Assembly (NCBI RefSeq): GCF_000143415.4 | Contig: NW_003314265.1 | Span: 1,198,446 to 1,262,445 of the forward strand | DNA: 64,000 nucleotides | Reading direction: 5' to 3' | Origin: Selaginella moellendorffii | Lineage: Eukaryota > Plantae > Lycopodiophyta | Shown: piece after piece, positions 24,158-29,283 of the stretch | Layout of the letters: each line of letters begins with the position of its first letter | How positions within the stretch are numbered: position 1 is the stretch's first letter | Notes under the pieces: generated by a model | Told to the model about the DNA's origin: nothing | The model's database searches: none | Seen by the model: the letters and a program-made list of their open reading frames with translations, nothing else | Program-made: the position numbers and the translations under genes

Positions 24158-25817
24158 ATGGCCGATGCCGCAGCGATGGCGCCAGTGATCGGGGAGGAAG
24201 ATCAATCGCCTGGCGGTGCTGGGACGAGCGGCATTCCAACCTGGGGGTAAGTGGAGAGATGTTGGCTTGCTTTCTCGGCTCAAATATTTGCTTTCCCAGG
24301 AGCTCCAGGAGCAAATTTGGAGCTCTGCCTTGGACAGATTACTTCGACGAGGAACTAGATGTTGAAATCGGTCAAGATGTGAGCCGCATTTTCTATTCTT
24401 TTTCTTCCTGTTTTTGACCTCGCATTTGCTACAGAGTTTTCACGTCTACTTGGCGGGCACACAAGGACCGGTTCTTTTTTGTTTGCACGGAGGCGGATCC
24501 TCCGGGTAACTTTAGCATCGATGAATTCTCTAGATTTCTCTTGTGATTTTCTTCCTACAGGCTATCTTTTGCGCTATCCGCAAGAATGTTAAAAGAGAAA
24601 GTCAAGGTTGCTGCGATGGATATGCGAGGTCATGGCTCGACACGCACAAGTGATGACTTAGATTTATCTGCCGAGGTAGGGTCTTCATGACAATATTATT
24701 TCTAAAAGTTCCTCCACAGACTTTATGCCAAGATGTTCTCGACGTTATCAGGACCATGTACAAAAACGATCCACCATCTATTGTGTTAATCGGACACAGG
24801 TTTGCTGCTAGTGCTACGGAGATATCTATTAACTTGGTTTTTTTTTCCAGCATGGGGGGTGCGATTGCTACTCGGGTTGCTGCAAAAAGAGTTCTTCGAA
24901 CGCTGGCCGGGCTTATTGTCGTCGATGTCGTAGAGGTAAGAAGAGATAAAACTTGTATACCAGCTTCATAATTTCCTTTGTCCAGGGTACAGCTATAGCT
25001 TCTTTGATACATATGCAAAAGCTATTGTCCAACCGTCCGCCAGCATTTCCCAGTGTTGAAAAAGCTGTAAGCTAAAAGGCCAGTGTAAAATCATACCTTA
25101 CTTGCTTGTTCAGATAGAATGGAATGTGAAAGGAGGTTCGCTTAGGAACATCGACTCAGCTCGAGTCTCGATCCCCCCAACATTGAAATACAATGAAGAA
25201 AGAAAATGGTCGGTTTCATTTCTTTATTTATTTTTTTGCTTTTTCTTTTTGCTTCAGTTCAATCTATTCTGCCTGCAGTTACGTGTGGCTTACACCGTTG
25301 GAAAAGAGTGAACGACATTGGAGAGGCTGGTATTTGCATTTTTGCACAAACACTGTTTTCATTTTTGAGGAGATTATTTTACTTTGCAGGTATGAAGGTT
25401 TGTCGGATATTTTTCTGTCGGCACCAGTTGCAAAAGTTCTCTTGCTGGCTGGAACAGACCGTTTGGATAAGTATGCATGTTTGAAGTTGCTTTCGATGTC
25501 ACTCAAACGTATAATTGCTTCAGATCCCTTACCATTGGACAAATGCAAGGCAAGTTTCAAATGATTGTAGTCCGTCACACTGGTCACGCGATACAGGTAA
25601 AAACATTCTTTTGTTTTCTGCTCTATAGTTTGTTGATTGGAACATCCTTGAACAGGAAGACGTGCCCGAAGAATTTTCGTCTCTTGTACTTACATTTGTT
25701 GCTCGAAACCGCATCGGTGCGCACGGTATTGATGTAAGCCTTTTTCCGATGAAAACCATTTATCTAACCGGAGCTTGGCAGATCCCTGGTCTCATTAGAC
25801 AGAGGCGAAGCGCATAA
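24158..25817 (+). CDS. PME1: Protein phosphatase methylesterase 1 (PME-1, alpha/beta hydrolase), multi-exon
   Basis: LPWTDYFD, LHGGGSSG, AMDMRGHG, LIGH|SMGGAIA nucleophile elbow, VVDVVE|GTA, LLLAGTDRLD, GQMQGKFQ, GHAIQ|ED. Confidence 0.92.
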
Positions 25818-25961
25818 GAAAATAGAGAAAAGCATAGAAACTGACACGGGTATGTGTAGCAAAAAAAGAGAGAACTCCATTTCACGGTATGGAAAAACCT
25901 CAAAGACAAGCTTTTGTTAAATACACACACTCCTGTTTTGCGTTTTTTCAGAATTCTCATT

Positions 25962-27379
25962 CTACTGACCACTCGGATAAGTTTCAGGAAGCACGTGAAG
26001 GTCAGGCGTCGCGCCAAGGGGCCTCAACGCCTTGGTCTCGTGAATATAGATGAAAGCATCGTACCTCTTTGCCAACATTGTTGGTACGTAATTTCCCCAC
26101 TTTTCTTTCTTTGGATCATATACCACGCCTATGGCCCTCTGGCCTCTCCATTCTGATAGACAGTGCTGGATTTTTCTTGCCTCAGAATCGTCAAGCAGGA
26201 GGTAGAAAGCGTCGCCGGGAATTTTCTCCTGCTGAGCCGCCTCGTGGATTATCATCTCGTAGCTGCCATCTCGGCCCTCCGGAACACGAAGTTGCAGGAT
26301 GGGACCAGCCCACTTGGACGAAGCAATGACCGAGCCTTTAAAGGTACCGAATCCTACGAGTGCTACCTGACTTTCACCGTATTTCTCACGAACCAGGCCG
26401 CCGATGTTCACCTGGAAGTCGGAAGCTGAAAGGTGACGAGAAGAAAAAAGAACTCGAGTACCTGGCCCATCTTACGCATGTTTGTGGCGCGGTAGTCTCC
26501 GATGTGGGTGTTGTGAGCCCAGACAATGAGTTTGTTGTGAGGCCTCGTCTTCAGCAGCAGGTCCAGTGTCTCCATCATGTGGCTCTCGCGGACGTTCCAC
26601 GAGTCCTCGTTTCCATACACCATTGCTCGATAGTAACTCTCGGCGTTCCGGACGATCCTGGCGTTTTGTTGCGCATCAAACACGACATCGCCATCCGCTG
26701 CTGCCGTCTCTTCGTCGATCCTCTTCTTCAGAAGATCCTTGAGAACTCTGAGAGCTTCGGCCTGGCATCCCTCCGGGAACTCCACCAAGGACTCCAGGTA
26801 CTCTTCCTCGTTTGCCTGGAAGGGATCGAAACATGCGTAGTGATGCTTAGCTTTCTCAGCTAGATCGGGGTCAATCTTGGCCACTTCGTCCAGAACAATC
26901 GCGATGGAGTCGAACAACGAGTAGACATCCAGACCGAAGAGACGAACCTGAGACTCACGGTCCAGTCGGGTGCTGTTGAACTCCTTCATCCACTCCACCA
27001 TCGCCCGGAACTCGTCGTTGGCCCACATCCAAGTCGGCCATCGCCTGAATGACTTTGCAAGGAGCTCCTCGGCACTAGAGGCGGAAGAACTCCCCTTTTT
27101 GGTGATGAAGCGGTTGACTTCTTGGCACGGTGGCCAGTCGCCTTCGATGCTGAGGGTGGTGAAGCCGTGGTGGGCAATGAGGATCTCGGAGATGATGCGA
27201 CGCCACTCGTAGAACTCGTGTGTCCCGTGCGTGGCCTCGCCGAGCATCACCACCTTGGCCTTGGCGATGCGTTCGATGAGAGGCGCAAGATCACGAGCTG
27301 GATTGTGGAGGGAGATGGGGACGGCTCTGCGAGAAATCTCCTTGAACACGGCATTGGAAACCGCTGGTGAGGATCCCAT
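25962..27379 (-). CDS. Erythromycin esterase (Ere) family protein, bacterial-type, two exons (intron 26412-26461)
   Basis: LGEATHGTHEFY, EGDWP, RWPTWMWAN, GLDVYSL, SWNVRESHM, VWAHNTHIGD, RAIGVVY, RYDAFIY, PETYPSG. A 50-bp GT-AG intron joins GQ|VNIG in frame. Confidence 0.9.
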
Positions 27380-27741
27380 CTTTATTTCTTTCTTGCAATG
27401 CTAAAACTTGTTCTCTCAGGCGATTTGAGCAAGTATAATGTAGTTGTGCTCTTGACAAGTGGCGCGGACACGTGGTTGCGCTCAGGCTGCTAGAAGGTGT
27501 AAAGAACTAAAACTTTTGTTTGTCTCACCGAGGGAGCTACCAAGAACAACGATCATCCCAGTCGACGGACTACAACCTCCATTCCGTTGGCCTGCTTGAG
27601 AGAAACCGATCCGAGGAACAAAGCTTGAATGAGCAATGCAGCACAGGAGGAGGTGAGCTATTCTTTTTTGCAAGTTTCTTTCATCAAAACCAACCTTTTG
27701 TTAACAGAGCTTACGTTGCCAAAACAGCACCACCGCCTTGA

Positions 27742-28935
27742 TCAGTCCTCGTCGAACCTCTCGGCCTTGCCCATCCCAAACGCCGGTCCCCGGTCCAACT
27801 TTGTCAACCGATACGACCCCGGCCCGGGGCTCTCGTCCCCGGCGCTCCTCAGGTACCTCATCCCCATTGAGAAAGCTGGCGGCTTCTTGCTCACATTGTA
27901 CAGGCAATCGTTGGGCTGGTAGTGAGCCGGACCGGGGGTGTGGCTCGTCAGCCCGTCCTGCCTCCTCCTCGCCATGGAAAACGCGGGCGGGCTGTACATA
28001 TCTCGCGGCGTGTAAGCTCCCGGCCCGGGGTTGCTATCCCCGAGCCCCTTGGGCCTCTTCCCGGCGATGGTGAAGGCCGGGCTGTGGAGCCTCTCGTCGG
28101 CATTGTAAGATCCAGGCCCGGGCGTGGGGTGTAAGTTCTTCACCTCCCTCCTCCCGGCGATGCTGTAGGCCGGCGGCGCGTCCAGCGCGATCCTCGTCCT
28201 CGGCGTGTAAGTCCCGGGACCCGGCCCCGACTCCGAAATCCGCGAGTCCCTCTTGCTAGCGATGGAGAAGGCCGGCATCCTCTTGGTGGTGGCCTTGATC
28301 CCGGTCTCAAACTCGTACTGGCCGGGCCCCGGGCCCTGGTCACCGGGCTTCCAGTCCCGCCGGAACGGCATGGTGAAGGCCGGTCCCCTGGACACCGGGC
28401 CGGGGGTATATGCCCCCGGCCCGGGTGTCTGCTCCCCGCCGACACGCGACGCCTTCCCCGCGATGGTGTAGGCCGGGCTGCGCGGGCGGGTGTCGCCGGC
28501 GGTGTATGCCCCCGGGCCGGGGGACCGCTCCCCCGCCCGCGGGGAGCGCTTGCCGGCGATGCTGAAGGCAGGGCCGTGTTCCCCGCGCGGGACGTTGTAC
28601 TGTCCGGGGCCGGGGCTCATGTCGCGGTGGCTGCCCAGGTTGCGGGAGGAGATGGTGTAGGCCGGCTCGCGCTTGTAGAGGAAGTTGGAGTCGGTGTGGT
28701 AGGATCCGGGACCAGGGTTCTCGTTGTCGGAGGGGCCGGAGTAGCGGCCGGGGATGGTGAATGCCGGGGCGCCGTATTGTCGGCCGGGTGTGTATGTCCC
28801 CGGGCCGGGGCTGTCGTTGTAGAGGGAGCCAGTGCGCTTGCCGGCGATGGTGAATGCCGGCGAGGAGGGCGTGATGGGGCGGTGGTCTTGGTTGTAGGCG
28901 CCCGGGCCGGGCGTGCGTTCTCGTCGGCGAGGCAT
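27742..28935 (-). CDS. ODF3/SHIPPO-repeat (PGPGxY) flagellar microtubule-associated protein, single exon
   Basis: The 397-aa ORF consists almost entirely of (S/T)PGPGxY...PA(F/Y)(T/S)(I/M) repeats. Confidence 0.88.
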   Translation of the reverse strand: MPRRRERTPGPGAYNQDHRPITPSSPAFTIAGKRTGSLYNDSPGPGTYTPGRQYGAPAFTIPGRYSGPSDNENPGPGSYHTDSNFLYKREPAYTISSRNLGSHRDMSPGPGQYNVPRGEHGPAFSIAGKRSPRAGERSPGPGAYTAGDTRPRSPAYTIAGKASRVGGEQTPGPGAYTPGPVSRGPAFTMPFRRDWKPGDQGPGPGQYEFETGIKATTKRMPAFSIASKRDSRISESGPGPGTYTPRTRIALDAPPAYSIAGRREVKNLHPTPGPGSYNADERLHSPAFTIAGKRPKGLGDSNPGPGAYTPRDMYSPPAFSMARRRQDGLTSHTPGPAHYQPNDCLYNVSKKPPAFSMGMRYLRSAGDESPGPGSYRLTKLDRGPAFGMGKAERFDED

Positions 28936-29283
28936 TGCTGGATGGAGCTAGGTCTTCCTTGTTTCTTTGATCCGGTTGATTAGACTGGTGTGCTCGCTCT
29001 TCTGGGCTCTTTCCTTGGTGCGTGATCTCGATTCCTCTCCTCTTTGATCCTAATCGCGTCACAGCCTCAGCTCCCAATTTGTTTGCAACTGATCGGTGGG
29101 AGTGATCCGTGAATCCATGGCTTCTTCTTCCTCTCGGCCCCCACCACAGGGGTTTTGGAGTGCTAAAAGTCGCGCCCCTCAAGCCCTCGCTTTTTTGAAT
29201 TGGCGGGGGCATATGCGATTGGTATATTTAATGTGAGCCGTCCGTCACAAGGCCGGGTGCCACCCGTCGGATCGGCGAGCGTT

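What the first reader, a model, noticed from the sequence alone, without database searches (positions are those of the whole stretch)
25962..27379. Bacterial-type erythromycin-esterase-family gene domesticated in a plant genome
Seen: a complete Ere-family ORF with intact GExxHG, ExDW and WAHNxH motifs, one 50-bp spliceosomal intron matching the host's short-intron style, and plant genes on both sides, which argues against contamination. Established: the family is mainly prokaryotic (also in some fungi), includes the macrolide-hydrolysing EreA/EreB, and is not a standard angiosperm gene as far as I know. Inference: horizontal acquisition followed by intron gain, perhaps giving a hydrolase against microbial macrolactones or endogenous esters. 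The substrate is unknown, and many homologs do not act on erythromycin.
Basis: partly seen in the sequence, partly recalled or inferred. Interest (0 to 1): 0.8.

Follow-up and report, generated by a model that had tools for sequence, protein, structure and literature searches.

The report
Bacterial-origin esterase gene in spikemoss
The spikemoss Selaginella moellendorffii carries an expressed, correctly spliced gene of a mostly bacterial hydrolase family (erythromycin-esterase type), whose closest plant relatives are fern genes, so it looks like an old bacterium-to-plant gene transfer rather than contamination or a recent event.

Summary
Observation confirmed. Window 25962-27379 (minus strand) holds a two-exon PF05139 (erythromycin-esterase family) gene with one 50-bp GT..AG intron. 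Its spliced product is exactly the annotated Selaginella moellendorffii protein XP_002964427 / SELMODRAFT_81736 (455 aa). Transcript contigs from four studies remove the intron. All five catalytic residues defined for EreC are kept. The locus is collinear at 98% with the second haplotype, so contamination and chimeric assembly are excluded.

The listed relatives are almost all bacterial or unnamed, and the best labelled ones are Bdellovibrionota (47-59% identity). No seed plant, moss or alga appeared in the lists. The gene is not Selaginella-only. Two intronless copies in the fern Adiantum nelumboides and an unidentified transcript (P0008) form a well-supported clade with it (100/97). A chytrid-like eukaryote also has a relative. 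The best reading is an old bacterial transfer predating the lycophyte-fern split, later losses, and an intron gained in Selaginella. The donor is unresolved. The product is probably a cytosolic ester/lactone hydrolase; macrolide activity is unlikely, since EreC is only a distant match.

The scan noted this gene twice before on other DNA of this genome (the allele and a 2.9-kb duplicate). No paper describing it was found.

The parts
26462..27379 (-). Exon 1 of the Ere-family gene (codons 1-306; ATG at 27379-27377). It carries catalytic E48 (27236-27238), H51 (27227-27229), E79 (27143-27145), R264 (26588-26590) and H289 (26513-26515).
26412..26461 (-). 50-bp spliceosomal intron (GT..AG on the minus strand, phase 0), removed in transcript contigs of four runs. 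Unspliced contigs are also present at lower depth.
25962..26411 (-). Exon 2 (codons 307-455 plus the TAG stop at 25962-25964).
27380..27394 (-). Minimal 5' UTR seen in a transcript contig (X7 contig 21 reaches 27394). A TATA-like ACATTATAC lies about 60 nt upstream of the ATG; its role as promoter is an inference.
24300..26083 (+). Convergent neighbour: a many-intron alpha/beta-hydrolase gene (introns of 44-70 bp). Its last exon (25951 to at least 26083) overlaps the 3' end of the Ere coding sequence. The gene runs on beyond 24300, the edge of the stretch examined.
27742..28935 (-). Upstream neighbour on the same strand: a SHIPPO (sperm-tail PG-rich) repeat gene, with a 397-aa ORF.
27367..27707 (+). 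Two canonical plus-strand introns (27367-27419 and 27653-27707, both with GTGAG donors) of a spliced RNA antisense to the Ere 5' end and the SHIPPO 3' end.

Best explanation
This is a functional nuclear gene of Selaginella moellendorffii. It encodes a 455-aa stand-alone member of the erythromycin-esterase (PF05139) family. The family is mainly bacterial. The plant gene most likely descends from a bacterial gene acquired horizontally, from a lineage related to the Bdellovibrionota-type clade, directly or through another eukaryote. The acquisition probably predates the lycophyte-fern split, because Adiantum fern genes and one unidentified transcript form a clade with it. The gene was then lost in, or never reached, seed plants and the other plants sampled. 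In the Selaginella line it gained one short intron at a CAG|GT site, it lies between ordinary plant genes, and it was later copied once as a 2.9-kb fragment. The protein has no N-terminal extension over its bacterial relatives, so it is probably cytosolic. It keeps the Glu-His / Glu / Arg / His set that activates a water molecule in EreC, so it most likely works as a metal-independent hydrolase of an ester or lactone bond. Shown here: gene structure, expression, splicing, residue conservation and tree position. Inferred: the direction and age of the transfer, the cellular location and the chemistry. Unknown: the substrate.
For: Identity and structure of the gene. Expression and splicing in four studies. 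Residence in the genome: the locus is collinear at 98% over 13.4 kb with the second haplotype, and a cDNA contig links the neighbour's spliced exons to the Ere 3' end. Bacterial relatives: the best non-Selaginella hits are 47-59% identical; the three contigs examined are gene-dense bacterial contigs, and the labelled genomes are Bdellovibrionota, then Actinomycetota. There are 9593 representative clusters at E<=0.001. Plant clade: (Selaginella,(P0008,Adiantum x2)) has support 100/97 in the 55-row LG+C20 tree and 96/48 in the 97-row tree. The fern genes lie in real fern DNA: a Ty3 retrotransposon is next door, no other gene lies within 21 kb, and there are two copies 89% alike. Catalytic residues E48, H51, E79, R264 and H289 align to EreC E47, H50, E78, R261 and H289 (residue roles from PMC7979712). 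They are conserved in the fern and the other eukaryote-type homologues. The ESM Atlas model has pTM 0.91 and TM 0.92 to a bacterial Ere cluster. dN/dS between the two alleles is 0.28. The intron is lineage-specific: the fern gene and the aligned part of the chytrid-like gene are uninterrupted, and the junction aligns without a gap to bacterial GQVNIGG.
Against: By raw identity Selaginella is closer to bacteria (58% to P0003) than to the fern (50%). In the 97-row data set an AU test did not reject placing Selaginella with the Bdellovibrionota clade, apart from the other eukaryote-type rows (delta lnL 18.9, p 0.073), so long-branch attraction among fast-evolving eukaryotic copies is not excluded. 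The organism of P0008 is unknown. The deep branching among the plant clade, the transcript-only group and the bacterial subclades is unresolved. Other lycophytes, ferns, bryophytes and algae could not be searched systematically; Logan supplied no Selaginella protein to the collection, so absence from the lists is weak evidence. No enzymatic data exist. dN/dS rests on only 18 differences.
Confidence: 0.6

Rival explanations
1. A recent, Selaginella-specific transfer directly from a Bdellovibrionota-like bacterium. The fern genes would be a separate acquisition, and the plant clade would be a long-branch artefact.
For: The highest identity is to bacterial proteins (58% against 50% to the fern). 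The AU test does not reject Selaginella grouped with the bacterial clade (p 0.073). SH-aLRT for the plant clade is only 48 in the 97-row tree.
Against: The plant clade has support 100/97 once the 2.0-length P0158 branch is left out and a second fern copy is added. The Selaginella stem is long (0.54-0.64 changes per site). The gene has an intron and lies at a settled, syntenic two-haplotype locus.
Confidence: 0.13
2. The gene reached plants from another eukaryote, for example a zoosporic fungus that had itself taken it from bacteria, or plants were the source for those eukaryotes.
For: P0158 lies on contigs with Snf7, RPL15e, Vps35 and a ProRS closest to chytrids. In the 97-row tree all twelve eukaryote-type rows form one clade with support 94/85. 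A group of eight sequences is found only on 1.4-1.6 kb single-gene, transcript-like contigs.
Against: The position of P0158 next to the plant clade has support 64/9 on a very long branch. Without it the link between the plant clade and the transcript-only group is unresolved. The organisms of the transcript-only group are unknown.
Confidence: 0.15
3. Vertical inheritance of an ancient eukaryotic or plastid-derived gene, with loss in nearly all plants.
For: The gene is shared by a lycophyte and a fern in species-tree order.
Against: No alga, bryophyte or seed plant appears among the best 120 hits of either search in a collection that holds NCBI nr, UniRef and EukProt. The plant clade sits among bacterial subclades, with Bdellovibrionota and Actinomycetota on different sides. 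No cyanobacterial affinity is seen.
Confidence: 0.07
4. Bacterial contamination or a chimeric assembly.
For: None beyond the bacterial look of the protein.
Against: The intron is spliced in cDNA from four studies. A cDNA contig joins the neighbour's spliced exons to the Ere 3' end. The same arrangement is present on both haplotype scaffolds, and the scaffold is 4.1 Mb long.
Confidence: 0.01

Closest known systems
Stand-alone Ere-family proteins of Bdellovibrionota (for example Bdellovibrio bacteriovorus WP_063242402 and Pseudobdellovibrio)
   Same: Same length (about 430-445 aa) and the same single-domain architecture. They are 47-59% identical over the full length and share all catalytic residues.
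   Different: The bacterial genes have no intron and lie in dense bacterial gene arrays. Their function is also unknown.
Adiantum nelumboides L7F22_058319 and L7F22_018081 (fern, unnamed hypothetical proteins)
   Same: They fall in the same well-supported clade and keep the same catalytic residues and length.
   Different: They are only about 50% identical to the Selaginella protein. They are intronless and sit in retrotransposon-rich, gene-poor DNA. Their expression was not examined.
EreA/EreB/EreC/EreD macrolide esterases (EreC structures 6XCQ and 6XCS)
   Same: Same Pfam family and fold. E47, H50, E78, R261 and H289 are all conserved.
   Different: The match is very distant (E 1.4e-4, 24 bits). 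Conservation of the macrolide-binding pocket was not tested. The Selaginella gene is not a mobile resistance gene.
Bacillus cereus Bcr135/Bcr136 (2QGM, 2RAD/3B55, deposited as 'succinoglycan biosynthesis protein')
   Same: These are the nearest solved structures (E 8e-23 and 2e-18) and share the active-site motifs.
   Different: They align over residues 4-334 only. From memory of Morar et al. 2012, not checked here, these proteins do not confer macrolide resistance.
Bacterial PRTase - dienelactone hydrolase - Ere fusion proteins
   Same: Their Ere domain is 41-51% identical to the Selaginella protein.
   Different: The plant protein lacks the phosphoribosyltransferase and alpha/beta-hydrolase domains.

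Membership tests
Erythromycin esterase family (Pfam PF05139) | Significant full-length match to the family profile | tested here: met
   Exon 1 scores 253.6 bits and exon 2 scores 110 bits against a cut-off of 26.4, on profile positions 1-238 and 244-358.
Erythromycin esterase family (Pfam PF05139) | Catalytic set E47, H50, E78, R261, H289 (EreC numbering, PMC7979712) | tested here: met
   E48, H51, E79, R264 and H289 align to these residues. The 2.9-kb duplicate copy has R264C.
Erythromycin esterase family (Pfam PF05139) | Ere fold | tested here: met
   The ESM Atlas model of this exact sequence has pTM 0.91 and TM 0.92 to a bacterial Ere cluster over 434 residues. Both sides of the comparison are predicted models.
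Macrolide-inactivating Ere enzymes (EreA-D) | Close sequence relationship to EreA-D | tested here: not met
   EreC matches at E 1.4e-4 and 24 bits only. The gene sits in a different, Bdellovibrionota-related subfamily.
Macrolide-inactivating Ere enzymes (EreA-D) | Hydrolysis of the macrolactone ring of erythromycin | not testable with these tools
   This needs an enzyme assay.
Plant gene acquired by horizontal transfer from bacteria | True residence in the host genome | tested here: met
   The intron is spliced, there are plant neighbours, a cDNA contig links the gene to its neighbour, and both haplotypes are collinear.
Plant gene acquired by horizontal transfer from bacteria | Plant sequences nested among bacterial ones | tested here: inconclusive
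   The plant clade lies in an unresolved fork with Bdellovibrionota and Actinomycetota subclades. The tree is unrooted and other eukaryote-type sequences are close by.
Plant gene acquired by horizontal transfer from bacteria | Patchy distribution in plants | tested here: inconclusive
   Only S. moellendorffii and Adiantum nelumboides are named among the best hits. Unannotated plant genomes and transcriptomes could not be searched.

The most novel reading that the evidence does not exclude
A 'plant-type' Ere clade was acquired from bacteria before lycophytes and ferns diverged. It has been kept for more than 400 million years only in seed-free vascular plants, as an active lactone/ester hydrolase that detoxifies microbial macrolactones or similar esters. 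That would be a plant counterpart of a bacterial antibiotic-resistance enzyme family.
Probability: 0.12. Interest if true: 0.65.

Novelty: new member of a known kind. Interest (0 to 1): 0.45.

Why it matters
Bacterial genes retained in seed-free plants are a recognised source of new plant metabolism and defence. This would add a family known mainly for antibiotic inactivation, and it gives a defined, expressed and apparently active enzyme to test. The clade shared by a lycophyte and a fern also provides a dated marker for asking when such transfers happened and why seed plants lack the gene. The gene is already annotated in public databases. The searches made here in the held open-access library found no paper that treats it as a transfer.

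Tried and rejected
Literature searches: 'erythromycin esterase' with Selaginella, land plants or fern; the protein and locus accessions; PF05139/IPR007815; and the run and sample ids. None found a description of this gene. The 'fern' search matched only author names.

The organism of P0008 and of the transcript-only group could not be identified. Their loci come from the look-up of encoding contigs, which the run finder refuses, and I did not try another route. The metagenome scan with P0399 gave only two more single-gene contigs.

I first read the joints 27365>27419 and 27650>27706 as extra 5' exons of the Ere mRNA. I rejected this because both skipped pieces are GT..AG on the plus strand only.

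GC and GC3 of the gene against its neighbours were not informative. The bacterial gene neighbourhood (succinate dehydrogenase, COX15, cupredoxin) gave no functional lead.

No AlphaFold job was run, because the ESM Atlas already holds a confident model of this exact sequence.

Full report
**What is there**

On the minus strand the window carries two ORFs in different frames, 27379..26408 and 26411..25962. They are joined by removing a 50-bp piece, 26461..26412, that reads GTACTC...TTCCAG. Exon 1 (306 aa) and exon 2 (149 aa) both hit Pfam PF05139 'Erythromycin esterase'. The scores are 253.6 and 110 bits against a cut-off of 26.4, on adjoining profile positions 1-238 and 244-358. The spliced translation is letter for letter P0122. 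That is SELMODRAFT_81736 / XP_002964427.1 / UniProt D8QZA1 of Selaginella moellendorffii, on a 4.14-Mb scaffold. So the gene and its intron are already in the public annotation.

**Expression and splicing**

I laid contigs of four runs from four studies on 24300-29200. All four remove about twelve consecutive 44-70 bp GT..AG introns of the plus-strand neighbour, so they are cDNA.
- X5 contig 14 passes from 26409 directly to 26460.
- Contigs in X1, X7 and X14 end at 26415 and continue with the letters of 26466-26482. This is the same junction, given the shared ACCTGG.
- Shorter contigs that keep the intron exist at about a third of the depth (X14 contig 9, X7 contig 20).
- X7 contig 21 reaches 27394, 15 nt above the ATG.
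- The neighbour's last exon (25951 to at least 26083) overlaps the 3' end of the Ere coding sequence. One cDNA contig (X1 contig 1) therefore links spliced plant exons to the Ere gene.

Two further joints, 27367-27419 and 27653-27707, are GT..AG on the plus strand only. They belong to an antisense spliced RNA, not to the Ere mRNA.

**Copies in the genome**

L048 (SELMODRAFT_103262) is collinear with the window over 13.4 kb at about 98% and shares the same neighbours, so it is the other haplotype. L001 (SELMODRAFT_120707) shares only 2.9 kb (window 25011-27872) at 97%. That piece includes fragments of both neighbour genes and lies among transposon ORFs, so it is a dispersed duplicate.

dN/dS is 0.28 between the two alleles and 0.72 between the duplicate and its nearest allele. 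The duplicate has R264C at a catalytic position. These three copies match the two earlier notes of the scan.

**The enzyme**

EreC work assigns roles to five residues. H50 is the base, E47 orients it, E78 and H289 hold the water molecule, and R261 stabilises the transition state. The mechanism is metal-independent (PMC7979712). In the HMMER alignment these residues match E48, H51, E79, R264 and H289 of the Selaginella protein. They are conserved in the fern and the other eukaryote-type homologues.

The ESM Atlas holds a confident model of this exact sequence (pTM 0.91), and it superposes on a bacterial Ere cluster at TM 0.92. The protein starts where its bacterial relatives start. I therefore infer no targeting peptide and a cytosolic location.

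The relationship to the macrolide esterases is remote (EreC E 1.4e-4). The nearest solved proteins are Bacillus cereus 2QGM and 2RAD/3B55. I commit to 'active ester/lactone hydrolase' at about 0.75 and to 'acts on erythromycin-type macrolides' at about 0.1.

**Relatives**

- The word-index search with exon 1 gave the Selaginella cluster at 96%, then nothing above 59%. The named hits were Bdellovibrionota, plus one MAG labelled Methylotenera.
- Three of the best unnamed hits sit on dense bacterial contigs.
- In one genome per GTDB species, the best matches are Bdellovibrio, Pseudobdellovibrio, Bacteriovoracaceae and Oligoflexia at 47-53%, then Actinoplanes and other Actinomycetota at 40-45%.
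- The exhaustive search of 1.84 billion representatives found 9593 clusters at E<=0.001. Many are fused to phosphoribosyltransferase and dienelactone-hydrolase domains.

**Eukaryotic relatives**

A first tree put three unnamed sequences next to Selaginella.
- P0158 lies on marine-biofilm contigs with Snf7, RPL15e, Vps35, PPR and a ProRS whose best named hits are chytrid fungi at 63-67%.
- P0008 occurs only as 1.4-1.55 kb single-gene contigs with AT-rich 3' ends, in at least three runs. It looks like a eukaryotic mRNA of unknown organism.

A profile of these sequences (A1) then found Adiantum nelumboides L7F22_058319. A second fern copy exists, 89% alike at the DNA level. The fern genes are intronless. 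They lie alone within 21 kb, next to a Ty3-type retrotransposon. The profile also found a group known only from about 1.4-1.6 kb contigs (P0130, P0399-P0401, P0410, P0429, L051, L052).

**Trees**

97 rows, IQ-TREE with LG+C20 (supports are ultrafast bootstrap / SH-aLRT):
- Selaginella is sister to (P0008, Adiantum), support 96/48.
- P0158 joins next, on a branch of length 2.0, support 64/9.
- All twelve eukaryote-type rows form one clade, support 94/85.
- That clade is sister to a 52-row clade holding 13 of the 15 labelled Bdellovibrionota, support 46/87. The two divergent Bacteriovorax-type rows (L033, L034) branch deeper, and Actinomycetota are more distant.

An AU test that holds Selaginella with the bacterial clade costs 18.9 lnL units and gives p 0.073, so it is not rejected.

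55 rows, without P0158 and with the second fern copy:
- The clade (Selaginella,(P0008,(Adiantum x2))) has support 100/97.
- The inner fork has support 98/92.
- The links among this clade, the transcript-only group and the bacterial subclades collapse into an unresolved fork.

Raw identities are star-like: Selaginella to bacterial P0003 58%, to the fern 50% and to P0008 51%.

**Reading**

Contamination and chimerism are excluded. A bacterial origin by horizontal transfer is the best explanation for a gene that sits among bacterial lineages and has no named relative in seed plants, bryophytes or algae in the lists obtained. I put this at about 0.85.

The transfer was probably not into Selaginella alone. 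The fern clade argues for an old event with later losses. Independent transfers, or transfer through or between eukaryotes, remain open. The intron is specific to the Selaginella line.

**Limits**

- The protein collection has no Logan-derived proteins for Selaginella itself, so unannotated plants may be invisible to it.
- The organism of P0008 is unknown.
- The tree has no root.
- There are no strand-specific reads.
- There is no biochemistry.

Noticed in passing
window 27367-27419 and 27653-27707 (+ strand): Two canonical plus-strand introns (GTGAG donors) are removed in contigs of X1, X5 and X14. This points to a spliced RNA antisense to the Ere 5' end and to the 3' end of the SHIPPO gene. 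In those three runs no contig covers 27366-27418, the stretch that holds the Ere start codon.
   Followed up: partly
window 25951-26083: The last exon of the plus-strand alpha/beta-hydrolase gene (joint 25885>25951) overlaps the last 40 or so codons of the convergent Ere gene.
   Followed up: partly
window 26341-26395: A further 53-nt GT..AG (plus-strand) joint inside Ere exon 2, seen in X1 only with a 27-nt side. It may belong to the antisense RNA.
   Followed up: no
L001 9511-12362 (GL377628.1): A 2.9-kb duplicate of window 25011-27872 sits among gag- and transposase-like ORFs. It carries fragments of both neighbour genes. Its Ere copy has R264C and dN/dS of 0.72, and the RefSeq protein from that scaffold is only 234 aa. 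It is probably decaying.
   Followed up: partly
window 27742-28935 (- strand): A 397-aa SHIPPO (sperm-tail PG-rich repeat) ORF with GC3 of 0.87. This is a flagellar-type gene, as expected in a plant with swimming sperm.
   Followed up: no
L044/L045 5001-6149: A gene-dense, 40% GC eukaryotic contig from marine biofilm metagenomes carries an Ere homologue among Snf7, RPL15e, ProRS and Vps35 genes. The ProRS is nearest to chytrid fungi.
   Followed up: partly
L046 and L050 (Adiantum nelumboides): Two intronless Ere genes, about 89% alike at the DNA level, lie in gene-poor DNA. In L046 a Ty3-type retrotransposon is next door. Gene GC is 51% against 41% in the flanks.
   Followed up: partly
P0129, P0139, P0165 (bacterial representatives): There is a recurrent three-domain bacterial architecture: phosphoribosyltransferase, dienelactone/alpha-beta hydrolase, then Ere. 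P0205 instead has a DUF4340-Ere fusion.
   Followed up: no
window 27078 (3 nt left out) in runs X5, X7, X14: The transcript contigs of three runs carry the 454-aa allele (the haplotype of L048), while X1 matches the window allele. Both alleles are therefore expressed. X14 is filed under a different organism label.
   Followed up: no
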